A DNA stretch of 38,786 nt from Octopus bimaculoides (Eukaryota), in assembly GCF_001194135.2 (NCBI RefSeq), contig NC_068984.1, positions 60,111,709 to 60,150,494 on the forward strand, read 5' to 3'. A program made the position numbers and the translations under genes. Of this stretch, positions 1 through 32,118 are shown one piece after another (position 1 is the first letter of the stretch; every line of letters begins with the position of its first letter). The notes beneath the pieces are model-generated. The model saw only the letters and a list, made by a program, of their open reading frames with translations. It did not search any database and was not told the DNA's origin.

Positions 1-61
1 ATATATATATATATATATATATATGTACATATATATACGCACACACACACATATATATATA

Positions 62-231
62 TCTTTTTTTATTTGTTTCAGTCATTTGACTGTGGCCATG
101 CTGGAGCACCGCTTTTAGTCAAACAAATCAACCCCAGGACTTATTTTTTGTAAGCCTGGTACTTGTTCTATTGGTCTCTTTTACCAAACCGCTAAATTAT
201 GGGGACACAAACACAGACACACAACATATAC

Positions 232-270
<39 letters not shown>

Positions 271-330
271 NNNNNNNNNNAAATCCACTCACAAGGCTTT
301 GGTCAGCCTGAGGATATAGTAGAAGACACT
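62..330 (-). mobile_element. tRNA-headed SINE family A, partial copy spanning a small gap
   Basis: Reverse complement matches the full copy at 9603-10013, including the tail GCGGTGCTCCAGCATGGCCACAGTCAAATGACTGAAAC and the core AGTGTCTTCTACTATA...CCAAAGCCTTGTGAGTGGATTT. Confidence 0.85.
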
Positions 331-575
331 CTGGGCCAGCCAAAGCCTTGTGAATAGATTTGGTCGATGGAAGCTGAAAGAAGTCTGTCATGAATGTATG
401 TATATGTGTGTTACTGTCTCTTTGATTAGACATCACGTGATGAAGAATATTGCCTTTGTTGGAAATAGGTGAGTGTCAGTGACAAGAAGGGTATCTAGTC
501 GTAGAAAATCTGCTTCAACAACTTTTGTCCAACTCCTGCAAGCATGGAAAAGTGTATGTTAACATCATGATGATG
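331..575 (+). mobile_element. SINE with family-A core and RTE-type (family C) tail, 5' truncated
   Basis: CCAAAGCCTTGTGAATAGATTTGG...GAAAGAAG core, followed by the ...GCAAGCATGGAAAAGTG...GTTAA(CAT/GAT)n tail. Confidence 0.7.
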
Positions 576-1399: not shown

Positions 1400-2215
1400 T
1401 TATTAAATAATAAAGAAATGAATGATAAAATAAGTTTGTCAAAGAAGTTGGCATTAAAGTAAAATATGGGTTCTAAGATAGAATTAATTTCCAAAGAGAG
1501 ATAGTTTGACCAGTCTAGTATTAATTTAGTATTAATACTAGAAAAGAGAGCAAACGCAGAATCTGTGGAAAAGAAGATGAAAGTATTAATCATCTCTTAT
1601 GTGAATGCATTATACTAGCACAAGAGTATAAGTACAAGCATGACTGTGTTAGTAGAAGAGTGCATTGGATGTTAGCCAAGTATGTGAATTCTAAGTGGTA
1701 GAAAAGTGATATGGACATGAACCAGAAGCTGCGATGGAGGATAAAAATTACTGGATTTCATGTGATTTCTCCATAAGGTCTAACCATACTATTGAAGCAA
1801 AGAGCCTTCATATAATTGTGAAAGATAAAGAAAAAAGTAAAAATAAACCAATTTTACCTCATAAACTTTGCAATACCAAATGATAATAGACTGGATGTCA
1901 AAGAAATCAAGGAATGTCAGAACCTAGCCAGAGATGTAGAGATTGTGGAAGACAAAGGTAACATTTGCCCCTGAGGTAATTGTTGAACTTGATGCAACAT
2001 CCTAACTGCTGCTTGAAAGGCTGAAAGATATTGGGATTGAGACATGCGTTGTTGACTTGAAGCAAAGTTCCTCTTTCTATTCTTGAAGAATCCTTAGAAG
2101 GACTTTTGAAATTTGAGGAGACTTGTTCTCACCAAACCCCAAGACAACATCCTTGTTAACTAAAGTTGCTTGTAATAGCTTTATAAAAATAAAAATACTA
2201 CTACTACTACTATTA
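1400..2215 (+). mobile_element. R4/Dong-clade (RLE-type) non-LTR retrotransposon 3' remnant, heavily degraded
   Basis: Broken translation gives RICGKEDESINHLLCEC..LAQEYKYKHDCVSRRVHWMLA (CCHC knuckle plus the RHD-like motif), then INFAIPNDNRLDVKE and RLKDIGIETCVVDLKQSS..RILRRT. Ends in a short trinucleotide tail. The 5' boundary is approximate. Confidence 0.8.
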
Positions 2216-2235: not shown

Positions 2236-2421
2236 AATAGGTACAAAGCCTGAAATTTTGTAGGAGAAGGGCTAATTGATTACATCGGCTTCAGAACTTG
2301 ATCCTGAAAGGATGCAAGGCAAAGTCGACCTCTCTAGAATTTGAACTTAGAACAGGAACCTGAAAGAAATACTGCTATGCATTTCATCTGACATGCTAAT
2401 GATTCTGCCAGCCCACCACCT

Positions 2422-3352: not shown

Positions 3353-4048
3353 GGAATCATCTTAAACGTAAGACATTATGACCGATTATGAAAACAATAG
3401 ATGGATAAGGTTCTTAAATATACTCAAATACCCAAAATTTCAAGGAGTTCCTGCCTTAAAAACAGGAGCTAACCACAGTTATTTTGTGTTTTTTGCTACA
3501 TTGGTTTCTATTAACCTATTTATTCTATCAGAAGAATTTTTATTCATTAAGATAGAAGAAATACACATAATTATATATATATATATATATATATATNNNN
3601 NNNNNNNNNNNNNNNNNNNNNNNNNNNNNNNNNNNNNNNNNNNNNNNNNNNNNNNNNNNNNNNNNNNNNNNNNNNNNNNNNNNNNNNNNNNNNNNNNNNN
3701 NNNNNNNNNNNNNNNNNNNNNNNNNNNNNNNNNNNNNNNNNNNNNNNNNNNNNNNNNNNNNNNNNNNNNNNNNNNNNNNNNNNNNNNNNNNNNNNNNNNN
3801 NNNNNTATATATATATATATATGTATATATATATGACTTTAAACTGAATCTGGTTGTGGGGCCCTGGTATGGACATTCCAGGGTTTTGAGGTGTGTGGAA
3901 CCACCTCTTAGTCACAATTTGTTCCCAGATCTACCCAGACAGGTATTACCTGTTTAGGTCTCAGCTATGTATTAATTAGCATGTGGATCACTGAGAATGA
4001 AGGACCCATTGTTCTTGTTAGAACTTCCTTCTAGGAGATGGTAAACAC

Positions 4049-4330
4049 ATCATCATCATCATCATCATCACTTAACATCATTGCCCATGTCTCCGTGAAG
4101 CCCAACACTCGAAAGGAATTCAGCCACTTTGCCTCCTTGAGGCCCAATGCTCAAAAGGAACTCAGCCACTTTGTCCCTGAAAGACCCAACGCTTGAAAGA
4201 AATTCAGCCACTTTGCCTCCATGAGGCCCAACATTTGAAAGGTGTTCTTTACATGCTACCAGCAGTGGTGCACTTGGTTTGACAGATCCTCTCAAGCATA
4301 GCACATCACCAAAGGTCTCGGTCACTAGTC
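4049..4330 (-). mobile_element. Family C repeat fragment with about 3.4 copies of a 42-bp unit and a (GAT)n tail
   Basis: 42-bp units start at 4099, 4141, 4183 and 4225. The same unit occurs on + at 31717-31825. Tail on the minus strand is GATGTTAAG(TGA)n. Confidence 0.8.
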
Positions 4331-8984: not shown

Positions 8985-9424
8985 TAATATATAAATATAT
9001 GCATATATCCATACATATATGTACATACCTACATCTATATGTATACATACAGGGATTTTTTGCGGAGGGTGAAAGTGTTAACAAGAACAGGACAGTGAGA
9101 ACAAGACAGTAAAAACAAACAGATAAAAAGGTGCTATATCTCCATAAGATCTTTTCAACACTGTGCAATATATGCACAACACAGCTAAAATTACTGTATA
9201 TGTTGTATACATTTACATTTATATAAATAACTAATTACTCTGTATATAAATAATTAAGTGCCCAATACAAGCTTCATAAATCAAGTATTATGTAAAGTAC
9301 ATTTTCATCTTGATATGTATTTTTTGTTTATGTTAACAAAAACGTGTACACTCCATTGGGAAGAGCAGAGTTGTATATTCTGTTATACAAGTAAAAGGAA
9401 GAACTCCATATAATCCTTTCTGTT

Positions 9425-9771
9425 ATAGGCACAAAGCCTGAAATTTTGTGGGAGGGGGGCTAGTTGATTACATTGACCTTTGTGCTGAACTGTACCTATT
9501 TCACTGACCACAAAAGAACGCAAGGCCAAATTGTCTTCAACAGGTTTTGAACTCGGAGCATGAAGATGAATGAAATGTTGCTAAGAATCTTGACCAATAG
9601 GTGCAGGAGTGGCTGTGTGGTAAGTAGCTTGCTTACCAACCACATGATTCCGGGTTCAGTCCCACTGCATGGCATCTTGGGCAAGTGTCTTCTACTATAG
9701 CCTCGGGCCAACCAAAGCCTTGTGAGTGGATGTGGTAGACGGAAACTGAAAGAAGCCCATCGTATATATGC

Positions 9772-9805
<34 letters not shown>

Positions 9806-10050
9806 TTGTGTGTCTGTGTTTGTCCCCCTAGCATTGCTTGGCAACCGATGCTGGTGTGCTTATGTCCCCGTAACTTAGCGGTTCAACAAAAGAGACCGAT
9901 AGAATAAGTACAAGGCTTACAAAGAATAAGTCCCGGGGTCGATTTGCTCGACTAAAGGCGGTGCTCCAGCATGGCCACAGTCAAATGACTGAAACAAGTA
10001 AAAGAGTAAAGAGCAAATATGTTAATGATTCTAACAGCTTGCCATCTTAA
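9425..10050 (-). mobile_element. SINE family B, split by a family A insertion
   Basis: B sequence at 9425-9600 resumes at about 10014-10050. Confidence 0.75.
9603..10013 (+). mobile_element. Full-length tRNA-headed SINE family A with an internal microsatellite
   Basis: GCAGGAGTGGCTGTGTGG (A box), GGGTTCAGTCCC (B box), CTTGGGCAAGT core-like motif, internal (TA)n(TG)n, 3' stem-loop CAGTCAAATGACTG and an A-rich tail. Confidence 0.9.
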
Positions 10051-10483: not shown

Positions 10484-10509
10484 CTCTAGGCTTTAACAGA
10501 AGAATTTAA

Positions 10510-10732
10510 CTCTTTAGCATTTAAACTGGTCATATTCAGCCCAAATTTTCTGTTTGTTTTATATTCAAATTGGCCTGATCCAGTCTTTCACACCTATCCT
10601 ACAATATCATTCTAAAAATAATAAACAATTGATTCATCAGAGTTTTCAAGCTATGAGATAATGCATGATTAATTGAAAACAATGTGAATAAGTAAGCATT
10701 ACACTTGACAGGTTAAGCGAAATGCTAGAGGG
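10510..10732. mobile_element. piggyBac-type MITE, 223 bp
   Basis: TTAA at 10506-10509 and 10733-10736. TIRs CTCTTTAGCATT / AATGCTAGAGGG. Confidence 0.85.
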
Positions 10733-10974
10733 TTAAACCTCTCTATTTCTTTGATATCCTCTTATCTCTCTATCAGTAATGTAACTCTCCACTTCCTACT
10801 TATACTCCTCCTTCACTTACTCTCCCCCTCTCACTGTAACTTCTAACTATTCTACCAACACTCTGCTTCTCCCATCAGTCCCACACCAATGCTGTCTCTC
10901 TTCCATTAATTCCTCCATCACCACCCACTCACCTCAGTCACAGTTTCTTCCATGCTTTTGTTGCATCAACTCAC

Positions 10975-14993: not shown

Positions 14994-15428
14994 TAGTATT
15001 AATTTCAATATTAAAATGACTATAAAGTTACTCCAGACAAGGCACTGTATTTTGATTGCTCATTCCTACCTGTGAGGGAAGGAGTGATACAGCTTTTTAA
15101 ATACAGCTTTAGGCTATTCCATGCTTTTAGTAATGAGGTAGTAAAGCTGTTAATTGAATGTTATAAGAAGTATGGCGTTTGTTATATGTATACAGGTGAG
15201 GTACAGTAGGTCCTATATGTACAGAATGATGTACTGATTTTAAAACTAGGAGCTTTTAGCCAGAAAGAAAAGCAGTGCTTGTGACCCTTTATAGGGCCTT
15301 TGAGATTGGTGGGAAGGAGCGAGGAAAGAAGGAGTCCTTAAATCAGAAACCTGTCCCAAATGCTTGTGACAGAGTGGACTCTATTAACTCTTTAGCATTT
15401 AAACTGGCCATTTCCAACTAAAAATATT

Positions 15429-15541
15429 CGGCCATATCATGCTGAGAGCACCGGTTCTCGTCCGATCACTGAAGTTAAGCAACGTCGAGCCTAGTGAGTA
15501 CTTAGATGGGTGACCGCTTGGGAAACCTAGGTGCTGTAAGC
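15429..15541 (+). rRNA. 5S rRNA-derived sequence (about nt 6-118); SINE head or pseudogene rather than a functional gene
   Basis: CGGCCATATCATGCTGAGAGCACCGGTTCTCGTCCGATCACTGAAGTTAAGCAACGTCGAGCCTAGTGAGTACTTAGATGGGTGACCGCTTGGGAAACCTAGGTGCTGTAAGC has the 5S A and C boxes. It lacks the first ~5 nt and has no oligo-T terminator. Confidence 0.92.
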
Positions 15542-15622
15542 GTCCCAAACTTTAATGGCGGTGCCCCAGCATGGCCACAGCTCATGAGCTGAAACTAGAT
15601 AAAATGAAAATGAAAATGAAAA
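15429..15622 (+). mobile_element. 5S-headed SINE (SINE3-type)
   Basis: 5S head + short linker + the tail GGCGGTGCCCCAGCATGGCCACAG shared with family A + (TGAAAA)n end. Confidence 0.8.
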
Positions 15623-15877
15623 CTTGTTTTATGTTCAAATTGTCTAGATCTAGCCTTTCACACCAGCCCTAGAATGTCATTCTAAAAATAAATAGTTACC
15701 TCATCAAAATCTCAAAGCAATAAGATAATGCATGATTAATTCAAAACAAAGTGAATAAATAAGCATTACTTTCGACAGAATAGTGTGAATAATAAAGGGT
15801 TAAAATCTTCCAAAATGCCAGGTGTTAGTTTTGAACTGGGTGAAGAATTAAAACTTTTGTCAAAGTATCAGTAATTC

Positions 15878-16114: not shown

Positions 16115-16365
16115 AAATTTCATAGCTTACTACAGGAACAATATCAAAATAATGTCCCTCAGATACTTCTGGAATTATATTCATTAAGTCTTACAGGCTA
16201 TTGTGGGATTTGAACTCAGAATGCAAAAAGATAAAATAAACTTTGCAAGGCGTCCAATCTGATGTTCTTACAATCTTGCCAATGCACCATTCTGGATACT
16301 GCTTAGTTATTGAATCTAAAAGGATGAAAGGCAAAGTTTACCTCAGTAGGAAACAAATTAATACC

Positions 16366-16546
16366 ACTGATGGTGGTGTGTTTATGTCCCTGTAACTTAG
16401 CAGTTCGGCAAAAGAGACCGATAAAATAAGTACTAGGCTTCCAAAAAGAATAAGTCCTGGGGTCGATTTGCTCGACTAAAAAGCGGTGCTCCAGCATGGC
16501 CGCAGTCAAATGACTGAAACGAATAAAAGAGTAAAAGAGTAAAGAG
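16366..16546 (+). mobile_element. SINE family A, 3' half
   Basis: GTCCCTGTAACTTAGCAGTTCGGCAAAAGAGACCGAT...CCAGCATGGCCGCAGTCAAATGACTGAAAC. Confidence 0.85.
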
Positions 16547-16910: not shown

Positions 16911-17567
16911 TTAGACTATCTGTCAGGCATCTTACTTGAGCTATCTTCTTTGATAACTATATTCTTGCCTTCAGGGCTGGTATTGTTATTGTCATTTCTC
17001 TTTTTGGTATTGGCATCGATATCTTATTGGCATTAATATCTTCATTAGCACCATTGTTATCATGATCATCATCATCACTATCGTCAGAAGGATCATGACA
17101 ACAACAACAAACTTGACCAAAATCACCACCTCCACTATCACTGCTACCCCCACCATCATTGCCACCATCACCATTGCTGCAACCACCACCATTGTCACCA
17201 CCACCACCACCACCACCTTCCTCACCATCACTACTGTTGCCACTATAACTATTGCTGCTCCTGCCACCTGTTGTGTCAATTGTCTCTTTTAGCCAAGGAG
17301 AGAGTGAGAGAGACCTTTTCTTAACTTGCTAGAAATAAATGCTAAATCTTCCTCAAATTATACACTTCTGAATTTAGAAAAGGGAAACATTGTACATGTA
17401 ATTCAATGTAGTTCAAAGTACTCTGTGTTTCAAAAAAAGATAGGACATCCAAGGATGGAACGTTCTTGGATCATTGGTCTCCTCAACCAGAGACAATTTG
17501 GGACTAAATAATGATAATAATGATCAAAGTGATTTGAAAAATAAACTTCCCGGCACAAGTAGACATG

Positions 17568-17888
17568 TGCAAGCATGGCAGTATGGTTAAGAAGCTTGTT
17601 TTGATACCACATGGTTTTGGGTTCAGTCCCACTGTGCAGCACCTTGAGCAAGTGTCCTACTATAGTTCCAGACAAAACCATACCTAGTGAATATAAATTT
17701 ATTAGACAGAAACTGGAGCCATCTTGAGGCCATGATGAAGCTGAGAGTAGCTTCTTTGGAATAAACTGTTATCTCCCAGCCATAATCTAGTTGATATTTT
17801 TTGATTTTTAAAAATGCTCTTAGTTTTGGATAGGATATTGTGTATTCCCGTCCTTTTATGCAAACTGTCAAATTTAGTCCAAACACCC

Positions 17889-17938
<50 letters not shown>

Positions 17939-18158
17939 TGTGTATGTCTTTGTGTTTGTGTTTGTTCTCCTCAACATTGCTTGACAACTGCTGCTGATTT
18001 CTTTATGTCTCTGTAACTTAGCAGTTCAGAAAAAAACTGATATAGTTAGATGAAATAAGTATGAAACATTAAAAAATAAGTACTGAGGTTGATTTGTTTA
18101 ACTAGCCCCTTCAATGCAATGCTACAGCATGGCCACAGTCTACTTACTGAAACAAGTA
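17568..18158 (+). mobile_element. SINE family A containing a maT 3' end (about 17705-17890) at its internal (TA)n
   Basis: A head at 17568-17705, a segment matching 21015-21196, then (TA)n and the A 3' half. Confidence 0.75.
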
Positions 18159-18429
18159 TGAAGGTGTGCTGAANNNNNNNNNNNNNNNNNNNNNNNNNNN
18201 NNNNNNNNNNNNNNNNNNNNNNNNNNNNNNNNNNNNNNNNNNNNNNNNNNNNNNNNNNNNNNNNNNNNNNNNNNNNNNNNNNNNNNNNNNNNNNNNTTAC
18301 AGGACTTTAGAAAAACTGAAGGACCTCTGCAATAAATCTGAGAGGGGAATATGTCAAATAAAATCATAGTTAACTGATCCTGCTGTATTTTCTTTTACTC
18401 AAAACCAGGAACTTTTCAGCACCCCCTCA
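18159..18429. mobile_element. Mariner-derived MITE spanning a gap
   Basis: TIR AACCAGGAACTTTTCAGCACCCCCTC; reverse orientation of 6446-6661. Confidence 0.75.
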
Positions 18430-24374: not shown

Positions 24375-24427
<53 letters not shown>

Positions 24428-24440
24428 ATAATAATAATAA

Positions 24441-25420
24441 TTGAGAGCTTAATGAGATACCTAGCCCAAAGTAAGGAAACCTTGCTAGTGACAGTTAGGA
24501 ATGAGGGAGTATTGAGAGCAGAGAAAAAAGGGAAAACAAAGGAAGAAGTACAAAAAGGATGTGATGAAGAATTACGCAACAATGGACTACACAATCAATT
24601 CCATGTAGCCACAACAGAAGTTGCTGGAAAAAATAGGTGGGATTGGCTGATGAAAGGAACCCTAAAAAAAAGAGACCAAGAGTACTATACTGGCAATGCA
24701 GGACCAAGCTTTGGCCATGAACTGGAGGGTCAACCTTATGAATGAGCAAGTGTCTCCGCTGTGCTGCTTCTGCAATAGAGTGGATGAAACCATTGCCCAT
24801 ATGAACGAATTCCTTAGACTTGCCCAAAACCACTACAAATTGTGGTGACATGACCAGGTAGTGAAAGTGCTACATTGGAAACTGTGTGAAAAGTGGGGGC
24901 TAGAGAGAGGCAAGACATGGTATGAACACAAACTGCAGAGAGTGGCAGAGTTGGAGACTAGCAAAATCCTCTGGGATTTCCCAAATTAAACAGGTTAGGT
25001 ACTAGAGCATAACAGACCGGACATAGTAGTGGTGGACAAGGTGCACCACATATGCTATATAGTTGATGTTGCATACCCCTTTGACCCACGAATAGTCAAG
25101 AAGGAAGACGAAAAGATAAATACAACCCTCTTAAGTACAAAATAGCCTGGTTATGGAAAATGAAGAAGGTGAAGATAGTGCCAATTATTGTTTGATCCTT
25201 GGGAACAGTATCAGAAGGCATCAAGCGGAATATAAAGGAAATTGGAATTGATTTCTCAGTAGAACTGTTACAAAAGGTTTGCCTTCTTGGCATGGCCAGA
25301 ATAATGAGGAATAATGAGCTGTAAAGAACAAATAGCATGGTACTGTAGGCTGCAGGTAGTAAGCCTGTTATGCATGCAAGACTCCAGAAGCTCCAACAAA
25401 ACCTGTGTTACAGAGAAAAT
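24441..25420 (+). mobile_element. R4/Dong-clade non-LTR retrotransposon, 5' truncated, degraded
   Basis: WDWLMKGTLKK; LCCFCNRVDETIAH; HDQVVKVLHWKLC; WYEH; KILWDF; NRPDIVVVDK..CYIVDVAYPFD..IVKKEDEK (PD..D..K RLE); LLQKVCLLGMARIMR. Flanked by (TAA)n on both sides. Confidence 0.9.
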
Positions 25421-25424
25421 AATG

Positions 25425-25487
<63 letters not shown>

Positions 25488-25500
25488 GTAATAATAATAA

Positions 25501-25655
25501 GCTAGGTGTATTACAAAAATTGGCATTACTTGGAACTGCACACATATTGTGTAAAGTATTGTCAGCCTGAGGTCCTTGTTGTGACTTGACAGACAGTTCA
25601 AACCCCTGGTAGATATAGTATCTTCAATTAATAACATCATGATATTGGATACTTA
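25501..25655 (+). mobile_element. Second R4/Dong-type 3' end from a different subfamily
   Basis: LGVLQKLALLGTAHILCKVLSA* plus a different 3' UTR, bounded by (TAA)n tracts on both sides. Confidence 0.8.
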
Positions 25656-25702
<47 letters not shown>

Positions 25703-25705
<3 letters not shown>

Positions 25706-25912
25706 TTTCAAATTTTGGTACAAGGTTGACTATTTGGGGGCGGGGAGTTAAGTGAGTTACATCTACCCCAGAGCTCAACTGGTATTTATTTTATTGACCT
25801 GGAAATGATGAAAGGTAGAGTCGACCTCAGATAAATTTAAACTCAGAACATAAAGAGGAGTGAAATATCTGCTTTGCATTTTGCCTACTGTGCTAATGAT
25901 TCTGTCAGCTCT
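25703..25912 (-). mobile_element. SINE family B
   Basis: Matches 2236-2422 and 14828-14993. Confidence 0.8.
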
Positions 25913-26760: not shown

Positions 26761-27943
26761 GTATCTTTGTGTGTATTTGTGTCACTTTGTCTTCACATTA
26801 CATGTAGATGTAAAGGAGTGTCACTGTTATACAAGTAATATTGTTGATTACCAATATACTGTGAAAACATGTCTGACTATGTTGGTGACAGGGAGGAGAT
26901 CCAGCATTAGAAAATCTGCCTCAATAGAATTTGCCTGACCCATGCAAGCAGAGAAATGATGATGATGGTGTTGATGATGATGATGATGATGATGATTATG
27001 TATATATATATATATATATANNNNNNNNNNNNNNNNNNNNNNNNNNNNNNNNNNNNNNNNNNNNNNNNNNNNNNNNNNNNNNNNNNNNNNNNNNNNNNNN
27101 NNNNNNNNNNNNNNNNNNNNNNNNNNNNNNNNNNNNNNNNNNNNNNNNNNNNNNNNNNNNNNNNNNNNNNNNNNNNNNNNNNNNNNNNNNNNNNNNNNNN
27201 NNNNNNNNNNNNNNNNNNNNNNNNNNNNNNNNNNNNNNNNNNNNNNNNNNNNNNNNNNNNNNNNNNNNNNNNNNNNNNNNNNNNNNNNNNNNNNNNNNNN
27301 NNNNNNNNNNNNNNNNNNNNNNNNNNNNNNNNNNNNNNNNNNNNNNNNNNNNNNNNNNNNNNNNNNNNNNNNNNNNNNNNNNNNNNNNNNNNNNNNNNNN
27401 NNNNNNNNNNNNNNNNNNNNNNNNNNNNNNNNNNNNNNNNNNNNNNNNNNNNNNNNNNNNNNNNNNNNNNNNNNNNNNNNNNNNNNNNNNNNNNNNNNNN
27501 NNNNNNNNNNNNNNNNNNNNNNNNNNNNNNATATATATATATATATAAACTAAAAAGCAGAAAAGTATAAATTTCTTATATAGTTCTTAATTTGTGTGTG
27601 TTCAACAGATGCTTCAATAGAGTAAAAACGTCATCACTTATATAATTATGTAATTACAGTACACAATTAAAATACATAATTGATTTATGAGTGATGGTTT
27701 ACCTATTTCTTCTGTAGGAGACAGAGAGAAAAAATGCCCTGAAATTAAAGAAATTATTATTGTTTTTAGTCTGTTGAAACAACTGTTGGAGACAATTACA
27801 TTATGAATTATGTGTTAAATTTATGCTTTTCTGCTTTATATTCTAAAAATGTTGTTCTCAACTATTGTTTAATCAGTTCTGTATAGACATGCAAGTTTAT
27901 TCCACCAGTATTTACTGTATTGTAATAATTTATTGGAGTTTAA

Positions 27944-28070
27944 CCCCTTAGCGTTCAGATTACTATGTCAAATGTAAGCATACTTATTCACATTGTTTTG
28001 AATTAGTCATGAATTATCTTGAAACTTTCAGATTTCAATGATATGACTGCTTGTTTTTATTACTGAATGA
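27944..28070. mobile_element. Partial TTAA MITE (10510 family, reverse orientation)
   Basis: TTAA-CCCCTTAGCGTTCAGATTAC...TTATTCACATTGTTTTGAATTA. Confidence 0.65.
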
Positions 28071-29736: not shown

Positions 29737-31706
29737 TATATAGCTGAGTCAATCTGTTATATGTATTTATCATTAATAATTGGTAGAACTTACATAGGTG
29801 TGCATAGACAGATAGACAGATGGACGGAAGTCTGGTACTGTTGAAACACATGGGAATGGCATTTCCTTTTTCAAATATACTCAAATTTAAAATGATCTAA
29901 TATAATGATATCATTCATCTGGCATGTGTTGAAATATGCCAAAACAATTTAATTTCTCACAAATATATGTTACTTTACATATAATTTATGTGTTAATTCT
30001 ATTTACTGAAACTTGCTAAAAAGTATATTTTGCTTTAAAGTAGTATCTCCTTGTAGACACAATTGTCAGTAATCATACTGTTTCCATTTCTCTCAGCCGA
30101 TATTTTTACATTAGCCTTTTTTCAAAGTCTAGATAATGTATCATACAGCTGACCATGTGAGAAGAATTGTGTAGGAAGATATATTCCAGTTTCTTCAAAA
30201 GTCTGTCCCTGTGCCTTGTTGCATGTCAAGGCAAAAGATGGCTTGACAGGAAATTGTTTGCATGTAAATGTGAATGGAAATTCCATTGATTGAGATACAT
30301 GTGGTATTCTTGGAATTAGCAGAGTTGATCCTGCATAAGGACCAGAAACAACCTCAGCCTCAATAACATGATCATATAAACTGATAGTGATGTAGCGTGT
30401 ATCAGTGCAATGTCCATTAGTAGCATCTAAATTTCTCAGAAGTATTATGCAGCACTTTTTCTTCAGTTTGAGAATATGTGGTGTAAGTTTGTTGATGATC
30501 TCGATTGGGTACAGAGTTTCATTCTCAACTGTATCTGAGCTTCTGTATATTTTTAGCTCACCAGGGATCCTGGTCAACAGAAAATCCTTTACAAATTGTG
30601 CTGCTTCATCTGTTGGAGTAACAATGGTTCTATTTGCAAGCCACACAGGGTTTGTGAAGTTAGTTTTCAGGTCAGTATATACAAAATCACATAGATTTGA
30701 AAGAGTACCACTTTCAAGGCAAAGGTCATTGGGTAGTTTGATTTTGGATTCACCCTAGGCTTTGTTCAACAGAAATGTTACCATTTCCTACATCAAGAAG
30801 GTAATTAGCAAACTCTCTTTCATCAGAATGACCTTCTGTAAGAAGTTTTAGATTGGTTGTCAGCTCCACTGCTTCCACATGATCACAAAGAAAAGACCTC
30901 TTTAGTGTTGCATCAACAATTTGTGATCTGACACCATTATTTTGAAGTAGAATATTCTCCTCTCAAGATACCCTAATCAGTCGGTCATGTGTAGTGGAAA
31001 CAAAATCATGTCTATATTCCCGTGCATATTCAGACATCTGTTTCAGTCACTTTGCCTTGGTTTCATCTGATTCAATTGCCCGTCTTTCTCTCTGTTGTTG
31101 TGCTTTTGCTGCTAAATTTTCTTTTTCAGTTGCATATTATAAGTAAAAGTTCATTAAAAACTATCTTGTTTAGCATGCTAGAAATAGCAGCGATCACATA
31201 GTTATTATTGTAAGGCTTATAGCATTCCAAGCAGCCATACGAACAAAATCACTTCATTTAAAAAATGAAATTATACCGGTATATTAAAAATTTTCATTTT
31301 ATCAAACATATTCATTTAACAAACTCTGGAAACTGATAATATTCTTGAAATTGTGCCTCATATCAAAGTTATATAGCTATTATTGAATTAATGACAATAG
31401 AGGCAAGCGAGAATGAGAGACTGTTGCAAATAAAAACGTAAAATGTTGCCTGTAACGAATTAATAGTGTTTATTATTAAACATTAAAAATCTACTCCGCA
31501 GTGAATGCAATGAATATTCAAATTTGCAAGAATTTGGAATTAGAAAATTCAAGATACTTCAGAAATCGAAATATAGGAAATTTCTAAGAACATGAATTTA
31601 TAAAAATATTTCCAGACGGTCAAGCTTTTAACATTGCTTTCTTTTAGTACTTTTAGTAATTGTTACATACTTAATTAATAAGCAGCTTTCTCCATTATAG
31701 TATAGA
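29737..31706 (-). mobile_element. Helitron with a helicase remnant; own 3' end missing or degenerate
   Basis: Minus strand starts a|TCTATACTATAATGG (31706). The 5' subterminal region 31170-31530 is homologous to 29140-29560. Carries Pif1-like coding sequence. Confidence 0.8.
30122..30959 (-). pseudogene. Helitron RepHel Pif1-family helicase C-terminal pseudogene
   Basis: GVRSQIVDATLKRSFLC..VELTTNLK..FANYLLDVGNG, then a +1 frameshift near 30755, then LANRTIVTPT, LLRNLD..NGHC, IPRI, KQFPVKPSFALTCNKAQGQT, FSHGQLYDTLSR. Confidence 0.92.
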
Positions 31707-31709
31707 TAC

Positions 31710-32118
31710 ACATACAAGTGTTGGGCCTCACGGAGGCAAAGTGGCTGAGTTCCATTCGAGTGTTGGGCCTCAGGGAAGCAAAGGGGCTGAGTTCCTTTTG
31801 AGTGTTGGATCTCACAAAGGCAATAACTGAAACATTTGGCATTATGTCATGCTTGAGAAGACCCATCAAACCAAGCATAAAGGCAGTCATGGCAGATACT
31901 GGTGTCATGCAAATGGCACCTATGCTGGTGGCATGCAAAAGCACCCATTACACTCTCAGAGCATTTGGTGTTAGGAATGGCATCCAGCCATAGAAAACCA
32001 TGCCAAATCAGACTGGAGTCTGGTGCAGCCTTCCAGCTTACCAGCCCTGGTCAACCCGTCCAACCCATGCCAGCATGGACAACAGACGTTAAATGATGAT
32101 GATGATGATGATGATGAT
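31710..32118 (+). mobile_element. Family C retroposon with a 42-bp repeat block
   Basis: 42-bp units start at 31717, 31759 and 31801. Family C body and (GAT)n tail follow. Confidence 0.85.

What the first reader, a model, noticed from the sequence alone, without database searches (positions are those of the whole stretch)
15429..15622. 5S rRNA-headed SINE inserted into a piggyBac-type MITE
A near-complete 5S sequence lacks its first ~5 nt (the 3' GTAAGC predicts a 5' GCTTAC) and has no T-run terminator. It runs into the same LINE-type tail as the tRNA SINEs and ends in (TGAAAA)n. It interrupts a MITE whose intact sibling is at 10510-10732, which shows it arrived as an insertion. 5S-derived SINE3 families are established in fish, amniotes and insects. 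The octopus SINEs I know of are tRNA-derived, so this may be an undescribed family; I cannot confirm novelty without a search.
Basis: partly seen in the sequence, partly recalled or inferred. Interest (0 to 1): 0.75.

Follow-up and report, generated by a model that had tools for sequence, protein, structure and literature searches.

The report
5S-rRNA-headed retroposon in an octopus MITE
A 194-base mobile element made of a nearly complete 5S ribosomal RNA fused to the 3' tail used by the abundant octopus SINEs has been copied into an older DNA transposon; this design is already known from fish, mammals and insects, and I could not show that this copy belongs to a multi-copy family.

Summary
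Bases 15429-15542 are a 5S rRNA (Rfam 90.4 bits) that lacks its first 5 nt and has no T-run. It continues into about 60 nt that align with the 3' ends of the tRNA-derived SINEs of this window and of three Octopus genomes. That stretch is two hairpins, AAAC, and then (TGAAAA)n ending at 15622.

The 194 bp interrupt a TTAA-flanked MITE. Eight other copies of the MITE are uninterrupted at that point. There is no target-site duplication.

This is the architecture of a simple 5S-derived SINE (SINE3 type); the insect element HaSE3 is the closest analogue. I fetched 290 kb of Octopus DNA: it holds about 40 copies of the tail and no second 5S head.

One published repeat table lists 1,095 SINE/5S and 778 SINE/5S-Core-RTE elements in O. 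bimaculoides; another lists 17 and 0. My verdict is that a retroposed 5S-tail chimera is certain, a copy of a modest (about 10^3) family is likely (about 0.6), and a one-off template-switch product is the main rival. It is a new member of a known kind, of modest interest.

The parts
15429..15542 (+). 5S-rRNA-derived head, corresponding to 5S positions 6 to about 120. The first 5 nt and the 3' U-run are missing.
   Evidence: Rfam RF00001, 90.4 bits, E 2.5e-18. In helices II-V, 24/25 pairs are standard; only 4 pairs of helix I are left.
15472..15519 (+). Region corresponding to the 5S internal control region: box A-equivalent AAGTTAAGCAACGTC (15472-15486), intermediate element GCCTAG (15489-15494), box C-equivalent TTAGATGGGTGACCGCTT (15502-15519).
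   Evidence: Positions mapped through the Rfam alignment. The box positions (+50-64, +67-72, +80-97) come from established knowledge of Xenopus 5S genes. Promoter activity was not tested.
15543..15555 (+). Junction/linker TCCCAAACTTTAA. It resembles the ...AAAGTTCTTCAAGG stretch just upstream of the hairpins in the 'B-type' tRNA-SINE copies.
   Evidence: Alignments.
15556..15577 (+). Tail hairpin 1 (TGGCGGTGCCCCAGCATGGCCA).
   Evidence: The minimum-free-energy fold gives the same hairpin in the 5S element and in two tRNA-SINE tails. The core AGCATG is invariant in 16 tails.
15578..15591 (+). Tail hairpin 2 (CAGCT-CATG-AGCTG).
   Evidence: The stem is CAGTC/GACTG in the other tails. Here two adjacent base pairs are exchanged, with changes on both strands. 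94.7% of cells pair, and 3/500 shuffles reach the observed value.
15592..15622 (+). AAAC spacer followed by the (TGAAAA)n / (AAAATG)3.7 microsatellite end.
   Evidence: TRF reports 15601-15622, period 6, 100% matches. GAAAC is conserved in all tails.
15627..15630 (+). First TTTT downstream, in MITE sequence. It is a possible Pol III stop for this copy.
   Evidence: Its function is inferred.
15384..15428 (+). Left TTAA plus the left part of the host MITE (the MITE starts at 15388).
15623..15803 (+). Right part of the host MITE (to 15799) plus the right TTAA.
10510..10732 (+). Uninterrupted sibling MITE, with TTAA at 10506-10509 and 10733-10736. It serves as a paralogous empty site.

Best explanation
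The 194 bp are a retroposed copy of a short RNA with a 5S rRNA head and the 3' recognition module of an octopus LINE/SINE system. That is the architecture of a simple 5S-derived SINE (SINE3 type).

Most likely mechanism. A source copy is transcribed by RNA polymerase III from the 5S internal control region. Because the 5S T-run is missing, transcription reads through the tail to the next T-run. The two tail hairpins and the short-repeat end are bound by the reverse transcriptase of a partner LINE, which copies the RNA into a nicked target. Here the target was a MITE, at AAATATT|CT. The cDNA stopped 5 nt short of the 5' end and left no target duplication. The head-tail fusion itself most likely arose by template switching from a tail-bearing RNA to 5S rRNA.

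Shown: the 5S identity, the missing terminator, the shared structured tail, and the insertion into a filled site.

Inferred: Pol III transcription, LINE dependence, the template-switch origin, and that this copy belongs to a family of roughly 10^3 copies rather than being unique.
For: 5S identity and intact helices II-V. No TTTT inside the element.

The tail is homologous to about 40 SINE 3' ends in O. bimaculoides, O. sinensis and O. vulgaris, and it folds into the same two hairpins.

Hairpin 2 carries two fully compensated base-pair changes that none of the other 15 aligned tails has. The tail therefore comes from a distinct lineage in which the structure was maintained. It is not a decayed copy of the common SINEs.

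Eight other MITE copies are uninterrupted at the site.

The same tail is attached to several different upstream sequences, including a tRNA head joined directly at TAAGTCC in L011. Head swapping onto this tail therefore recurs.

A published RepeatModeler2/RepeatMasker table gives 0.0301% SINE/5S and 0.0214% SINE/5S-Core-RTE of 3,637,615 classified elements in O. bimaculoides, which is 1,095 and 778 elements. It gives 0.0387% of 2,572,483 (996) in O. vulgaris (PMC8967140). That density, one per 1-2 Mb, agrees with my finding no second copy in 0.26 Mb.

HaSE3 in moths has the same design: a 5S head with a 3' region shared with a tRNA SINE and an RTE LINE (PMC3272025).

Inference: if the window was drawn at random, meeting such an element in 37 kb is far more probable for 10^3-10^4 copies than for a unique event.
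Against: No second copy was found in 289.7 kb (261.5 kb without N) of Octopus DNA, by BLAST or by Rfam.

The labels in either table were not tied to this sequence.

There is no target-site duplication. No partner LINE with this tail was found in the sample. There is no transcript evidence.

The cellular 5S gene of the octopus was not available. I therefore could not tell whether the head carries family-specific substitutions.
Confidence: 0.6

Rival explanations
1. One-off chimeric retro-pseudogene. During a single LINE-mediated reverse transcription of a tail-bearing RNA (the LINE itself or a rare SINE subfamily), the enzyme switched template to a cellular 5S rRNA after about 70 nt. The product was inserted once and never served as a source gene.
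For: Only one copy in the 38.8 kb window plus 290 kb of sample. The fusion lies essentially at the 3' end of the 5S sequence, and the 5S part is structurally intact as expected for a copy of the functional RNA. One published annotation finds almost no SINE/5S in O. bimaculoides. Template-switch chimeras of 5S, U6 and other small RNAs with L1 are known in mammals (my own knowledge: Buzdin and colleagues, 2002-2003). Template switching is the origin proposed for HaSE3 and for vertebrate 5S SINEs (PMC3272025; PMC4824008).
Against: The 3' U residues of mature 5S rRNA are absent at the junction (GTAAGC|GTCCC). The tail matches none of the abundant tail types and has its own compensated hairpin, so a separate rare donor must be assumed. 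Another annotation counts about 1,900 5S-labelled SINE elements. The chance that a single window holds a unique event is about 1e-5; this is an inference and assumes the window was picked at random.
Confidence: 0.33
2. Two unrelated events that happen to abut: a 5'-truncated SINE or LINE tail fragment inserted into the MITE, and a separate 5S pseudogene landed or recombined immediately upstream. Alternatively, a DNA-level recombination or gene conversion joined them.
For: 5'-truncated tail-only fragments exist in the sample. No target-site duplication brackets the whole unit.
Against: A separate 5S retro-copy would need its own 3' priming tail, and none is present. The 5S end and the tail abut without intervening MITE bases. 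The MITE consensus continues directly across the whole 194 bp, with at most a 3-nt loss, as expected for one event.
Confidence: 0.04
3. Assembly artefact: a chimeric contig that joins 5S rDNA reads to SINE reads.
For: The window comes from a gap-rich scaffold assembly with 2,166 N.
Against: There is no gap within 15250-15850. Both halves of one MITE flank the unit in register with eight other copies, which a misjoin would not produce.
Confidence: 0.03

Closest known systems
HaSE3 (Helicoverpa armigera and other moths), a 5S rRNA-derived SINE (PMC3272025)
   Same: A 5S head carrying the box A/IE/box C region. The 3' region is shared with a co-resident tRNA-derived SINE (HaSE1) and with a LINE 3' end that finishes in a short tandem repeat. 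Its proposed origin is a template switch from the tRNA-SINE RNA to 5S rRNA. It has a much lower copy number than the tRNA SINE, and one copy was reported without a TSD.
   Different: HaSE3 shares both body and tail with HaSE1 (94% between consensuses). Here only about 60 nt of tail are shared, at 73-85%, with a private hairpin variant. HaSE3 was shown to be multi-copy and its partner LINE (HaRTE1) was identified; neither was done here. The phylum also differs.
SINE3 of zebrafish, and the 5S-headed vertebrate SINEs (OS-SINE1, AmnSINE1/DeuSINEs, fruit-bat MEG-RS/RL)
   Same: A 5S-derived Pol III head without its own terminator, fused to a LINE-type 3' part. OS-SINE1 shares a roughly 70-bp tail with the tRNA SINEs SmaI and HpaI and with the RSg-1 LINE (as cited in PMC3272025; listed in PMC10946416).
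   Different: Most of these have extra body domains (tRNA-related, Deu, CORE). The bat elements use L1 and A-tails. The octopus element is head plus tail only.
5S rRNA/L1 and U6/L1 chimeric retrogenes of mammals (template-switch products; my own knowledge, not checked in a paper here)
   Same: A small Pol III RNA fused at its 3' end to the 3' part of a LINE/SINE transcript and inserted by LINE machinery.
   Different: Those are sporadic, each with its own breakpoint. They carry poly(A) and TSDs and usually a full-length small RNA. Here there is a structured non-poly(A) tail, no TSD and a 5-nt 5' truncation.
Octopus tRNA-derived SINEs (OR1, OR2 and OK of Ohshima and Okada 1994; labelled SINE/tRNA-Core and tRNA-Deu in PMC8967140)
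   Same: They share the 3' module of two hairpins, GAAAC and a short-repeat end, so presumably the same or a closely related partner LINE.
   Different: Their head is tRNA-like, with box A-like TGGCTGTGTGG and box B-like GGTTCAGTCCC at 9612-9665. They are long composite elements with an internal (TA)n(TG)n tract. I did not match them to the published OR/OK consensus sequences.

Membership tests
SINE (SINEBase criteria, PMC3531059) | Short (<1 kb), interspersed, non-tandem repeat | tested here: met
   194 bp, a single unit inside a MITE, not tandem.
SINE (SINEBase criteria) | [quoted passage not shown] | tested here: inconclusive
   One copy in the window and none in 261.5 kb (non-N) of Octopus DNA. 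This only excludes more than about 4x10^4 copies. Published tables disagree: 1,095+778 elements against 17+0.
SINE (SINEBase criteria) | At least 60% identity to tRNA, 5S rRNA or 7SL RNA over at least 60 nt | tested here: met
   The Rfam 5S_rRNA model is matched over 114 nt at 90.4 bits.
SINE (SINEBase criteria) | [quoted passage not shown] | tested here: inconclusive
   Extra LINE-type tail sequence is present. Diagnostic changes could not be judged because neither other copies nor the octopus cellular 5S gene were available.
SINE / SINE3 | Transcription by Pol III from the internal promoter, reading into the tail | not testable with these tools
SINE / SINE3 | 3' end derived from, and mobilised by, a partner LINE | tested here: inconclusive
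   The tail is shared with several SINE lineages and is structurally conserved. No LINE carrying it was found in 0.33 Mb.
Template-switch chimeric retrogene (one-off) | Unique junction: one locus, or different breakpoints at different loci | not testable with these tools
   This needs a genome-wide search. No other junction of any kind was seen in the sample.
Template-switch chimeric retrogene (one-off) | Acceptor RNA copied from its mature 3' end, including terminal U residues, and the unit flanked by TSDs | tested here: not met
   The junction reads GTAAGC|GTCCC with no T. There is no TSD; the MITE consensus runs AAATATT|CT(ACC)TG across the site.
Functional 5S rRNA gene | Complete helix I, a 3' T-run terminator, and usually a tandem array | tested here: not met
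   The 5' strand of helix I is missing, there is no T-run, and the copy is single and embedded in a MITE.
piggyBac-type MITE (the host element) | TTAA target duplication, short terminal inverted repeats beginning CCC...GGG, no coding capacity, multi-copy | tested here: met
   TTAA on both sides of both window copies. Ends are CTCTTTAGCATTT / AAATGCTAGAGGG (sibling) and CTCTTTAGC... / ...AAAGGG (host). About 225 bp long. There is a third partial copy in the window, and 8 BLAST matches, 6 of them near full length, in the loci. One TIR starts CTC instead of CCC. No link to a piggyBac transposase was tested.

The most novel reading that the evidence does not exclude
[quoted passage not shown] It would be the first characterised in Mollusca (Lophotrochozoa). 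It would have been born independently, by putting a 5S head on the structured tail that drives the very large octopus tRNA-SINE expansion, and it would have kept its own compensated version of the tail hairpin.
Probability: 0.5. Interest if true: 0.4.

Novelty: new member of a known kind. Interest (0 to 1): 0.3.

Why it matters
If it is a family, it adds a phylum to the scattered list of independent births of 5S-derived SINEs. It would also be a clean, minimal example (head plus about 60 nt of tail) of how a new Pol III head captures an existing LINE recognition module. The compensated hairpin points to which tail features the octopus LINE enzyme reads. That bears on the large SINE expansions that characterise octopus genomes. 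If it is a single event, it is only a curiosity: a chimeric 5S retro-pseudogene. Either way, 5S-like hits in octopus genomes should not be counted as rRNA genes without checking for this tail.

Tried and rejected
I made no further attempt.

2. Pattern scans of public collections. The junction pattern found nothing in metagenome contigs. A general tail pattern gave two bacterial chance matches there and nothing in genome contigs or viral contigs. These collections hold no octopus DNA, so the negatives say nothing.

3. Six-frame peptides across the junction, used as a protein query to catch spurious ORFs over other copies: no hits.

4. Sampling octopus DNA through annotated TE-like proteins. This gave 12 loci and 289.7 kb with no second 5S head. 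The power is too low for a family of about 10^3 copies.

5. Looking for the partner LINE. The two LINE 3' fragments in the window end differently: one in (AAT)n, the other has no such tail. No RT ORF lies upstream of four tails that have unrelated upstream sequence.

6. Retrieving the octopus or squid cellular 5S rRNA sequence from the 1983-84 papers: these are not held.

7. Full-text searches for the tail and junction sequences and for Repbase-style names, and for '5S-Core-RTE': nothing.

8. A tRNA call for the neighbouring SINE heads. ARAGORN and Rfam do not call them, so their tRNA origin rests on box A/B-like motifs only.

9. I considered reading ATATT (15424-15428) as part of the element, as Rfam aligns it. 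I rejected this because it matches the MITE consensus.

Full report
OBSERVATION. Rfam's 5S_rRNA model matches 15424-15542 on the + strand at 90.4 bits (gathering score 38, E 2.5e-18). It is the only Rfam family found in the window. The first five aligned bases (AUAUU) fail to pair with the 3' strand GUAAGC, and they match the consensus of the surrounding MITE family (AAATATT). In helices II-V, 24 of 25 modelled pairs are standard pairs, and 8 CpG remain in the head. The longest T run within 15429-15622 is TTT. The first TTTT is at 15627, five bases beyond the element. The element ends in (AAAATG)3.7 at 15601-15622.

TAIL. After GTAAGC the sequence runs GTCCCAAACTTTAA, then TGGCGGTGCCCCAGCATGGCCA, CAGCTCATGAGCTG, AAAC, and the short repeat. 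Bases 15553-15604 align at 76-85% to four other places in the window: 9953-10003, 67-117(-), 16483-16528 and 18109-18156. These four are the 3' ends of long composite SINE copies. Their heads carry box A-like and box B-like motifs (TGGCTGTGTGG, GGTTCAGTCCC at 9612-9665). Neither ARAGORN nor Rfam calls them tRNA, so 'tRNA-derived' is an inference from those motifs.

The tail folds into two adjacent hairpins in the 5S element and in two tRNA-SINE tails alike. In an alignment of 16 tails the second stem is CAGTC/GACTG everywhere except in the 5S element. There it is CAGCT/AGCTG: two neighbouring base pairs changed on both strands, with pairing kept. Overall 94.7% of cells pair, and only 3 of 500 shuffles reach the observed number of double changes. 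All of that signal comes from this one sequence. The element's tail is only about 73-75% identical over 54 nt to the two common tail consensus types. It combines features of both, GGCGGTGC as in type A and CCCC and CTTTAATGG as in type B. I conclude that the tail comes from a separate lineage in which the hairpin was maintained. It is not a decayed copy of the abundant SINEs.

INSERTION. The unit sits inside a roughly 225-bp element flanked by TTAA on both sides (15384-15387 and 15800-15803), with ends CTCTTTAGC... and ...AAAGGG. The sibling at 10510-10732 has the same ends (CTCTTTAGCATTT / AAATGCTAGAGGG) and TTAA flanks. There is a third partial copy at 27936-28059(-). BLAST against the fetched octopus loci gave eight further matches, six of them near full length. 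The sibling and six of the locus copies were aligned across the insertion point, and all are continuous there. The consensus reads ...AAATATT CTACC TGTTTTATGTTC..., against AAATATT [194 bp] CT TGTTTTATGTTC in the host. The 194 bp therefore arrived as one insertion. There is no target-site duplication, and perhaps three target bases were lost. A contig misjoin would not restore the two MITE halves in register, and there is no gap in 15250-15850.

ORGANISM AND THE SEARCH FOR MORE COPIES. A Helitron-type Pif1 helicase fragment at 30125-30754(-) has its best matches (74-80% identity) in Octopus bimaculoides proteins. The decisive test, whether the junction is multi-copy, could not be made.
- The metagenome, prokaryote-genome and viral collections contain no octopus DNA. 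Even the abundant SINE tail finds only two bacterial chance matches.
- A six-frame peptide query across the junction found nothing among predicted proteins.

I therefore sampled octopus DNA through annotated TE-like proteins. This gave eight O. bimaculoides loci, three O. sinensis loci and one O. vulgaris locus, 289,703 bp in total and 261,492 bp without N. BLAST with short words and Rfam at gathering threshold found no second 5S head. About 40 copies of the tail module were found. Zero copies in about 180 kb of O. bimaculoides sequence only excludes a density above roughly one per 60 kb, or about 4x10^4 copies.

The sample did show that this tail is attached to several different upstream sequences. 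One is a tRNA-like head joined directly at TAAGTCC to the tail in L011, near 4018-4150(-). Four other tails have unrelated upstream sequence and no RT ORF nearby. Head-tail recombination on this module is therefore recurrent.

LITERATURE. SINEBase defines a SINE as a short interspersed repeat with at least 100 copies and at least 60% identity to tRNA, 5S or 7SL RNA over at least 60 nt. It distinguishes SINEs from RNA pseudogenes by extra sequence or diagnostic substitutions (PMC3531059). [quoted passage not shown] No held paper describes one in a mollusc.

The closest analogue is HaSE3 of moths. It has a 5S head and a body and tail shared with the tRNA-derived HaSE1 and with the RTE-type LINE HaRTE1, which ends in (TGA)n. 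It is far rarer than HaSE1, one copy lacks a TSD, and it is interpreted as a template-switch chimera that became a family (PMC3272025).

Two published automated annotations bear on copy number and disagree.
- Marino et al. (RepeatModeler2 plus RepeatMasker) list SINE/5S at 0.0301021% and SINE/5S-Core-RTE at 0.0213876% of 3,637,615 classified elements in O. bimaculoides. That is 1,095 and 778 elements. They list SINE/5S at 0.0387175% of 2,572,483 (996) in O. vulgaris (PMC8967140, Tables S2 and S3).
- Jiang et al. list 17 SINE/5S and 0 5S-Core-RTE in the column whose implied genome size (2.339 Gb) is that of O. bimaculoides, and 16 in the 2.72-Gb column (PMC9795677).

Neither paper discusses these rows, and I could not link either label to this sequence. 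A family of 1,000-1,900 copies would give 0.08-0.15 expected copies in my sample. My null result is therefore compatible with it.

MECHANISM. The following points are shown:
- a 5S sequence without its first 5 nt and without a terminator;
- a conserved two-hairpin, short-repeat tail shared with the octopus SINEs;
- one-step insertion into a MITE.

The following points are inferred. The RNA was made by Pol III from the 5S internal control region; the equivalents of box A, the intermediate element and box C lie at 15472-15519. It read through the tail because the T-run is absent. It was reverse-transcribed at a nicked target by a LINE enzyme that recognises the hairpins and the repeat end, as in the stringent LINE/SINE pairs of the eel, which is established knowledge. 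The partner LINE was not found. The two LINE 3' fragments in the window have zf-RVT-like C-termini, and neither carries the SINE tail: one ends in (AAT)n. The head-tail fusion is best explained by template switching, whichever hypothesis about copy number is right.

FAMILY OR ONE-OFF. Four points favour a family.
- The private, compensated tail hairpin.
- The lack of the 3' U residues expected if mature 5S rRNA had been the acceptor.
- The 1,095+778 labelled elements in one annotation.
- An inference: a random 37-kb window is about a thousand times more likely to hold a member of a 10^3-copy family than a unique event.

Four points favour a one-off.
- There is no second copy in hand.
- The other annotation lists only 17 elements.
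- The 5S structure is intact, as expected for a direct copy of the cellular RNA.
- The window may not have been picked at random.

I put the family at about 0.6 and the single chimeric retro-pseudogene at about 0.33. Two abutting events and an assembly artefact together get about 0.07.

VERDICT. The label 'SINE' is architecturally right but unproven on the copy-number criterion. 'Undescribed' is plausible for the curated literature, but it is weakened by an existing automated label, and it could not be checked against Repbase or Dfam. The design is well known (SINE3, OS-SINE1, HaSE3). At best this is a new member of a known kind in a new phylum. Interest 0.3.

Noticed in passing
window 9598-10010 (+), about 60-470 (-), 16365-16545 (+, 5'-truncated), about 17430-18160 (+): Long composite SINE copies. 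Each has a tRNA-like head (box A/B-like motifs), a conserved central stretch (...CTTGGGCAAGTGTCTTCTACTATAGCC...), an internal (TA)n(TG)n microsatellite, a roughly 170-nt 3' domain, and the two-hairpin tail. Two tail subtypes (A and B) occur. Assembly gaps often fall in the internal microsatellite.
   Followed up: partly
L011 about 4018-4150 (-) (O. sinensis): A tRNA-like head (GGAGTGGCAGTGTGGCAAGTAGCATGCTTGG) is joined directly at TAAGTCC to the last roughly 80 nt of the SINE. This is either an internally deleted copy or a separate head-tail recombinant. The breakpoint lies next to the motif where the 5S element's shared sequence may begin (AAGC|GTCCC).
   Followed up: partly
L003 6226-6261 (+), L006 4442-4489 (-), L008 17181-17221 (+), L011 18312-18348 (-): Diverged copies of the same tail preceded by sequences unrelated to the common SINE body. 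No reverse-transcriptase ORF lies within 4.5 kb upstream. They may be further SINE lineages or old LINE ends.
   Followed up: partly
window 24407-25640 (+) and 1525-2200 (+): Two 3' fragments of a LINE-like ORF with a weak zf-RVT match (CCHC-type C-terminus, ...ILWDFPN...HNRPDIVV...LLGTAHIL...). The first is interrupted by an (AAT)n tract and ends in (AAT)n. Neither carries the SINE tail.
   Followed up: partly
window 30125-30962 (-): A Helitron-type Pif1 helicase fragment (Pfam Pif1_2B_dom), 74-80% identical to many O. bimaculoides 'uncharacterized' proteins. It served to identify the organism.
   Followed up: yes
window 4035-4328 and 31631-31950 (opposite strands): Two copies of a repeat that contains a 42-bp tandem unit (CTCCTTGAGGCCCAACGCTCGAAAGGAATTCAGCCACTTTGC, 3.4 copies at 4091-4232). 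No Pfam match for its ORF.
   Followed up: no
window 2240-2400, 9420-9590, 25700-25800: Another short repeat family (...GGCACAAAGCCTGAAATTTTGTGGGAGGGG...GATTACAT...) lies immediately upstream of, or next to, SINE and LINE fragments. It was not classified.
   Followed up: no
L013 19427-20823 (+) (O. bimaculoides CM046619.1, inside a gene range): A degenerate eukaryotic 18S rRNA match (409 bits, with large deletions) runs into ITS-like sequence. It is a dispersed rDNA fragment, and it is not joined to the SINE tail.
   Followed up: partly
PMC8967140 Table S2 against PMC9795677 Additional file 3: Two published repeat annotations of the same O. bimaculoides assembly differ about 100-fold for 5S-labelled SINEs (1,873 against 17 elements). 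For the giant squid A. dux both report thousands of SINE/5S and 5S-Deu-L2 elements. That would be another uncurated cephalopod 5S-SINE candidate.
   Followed up: partly
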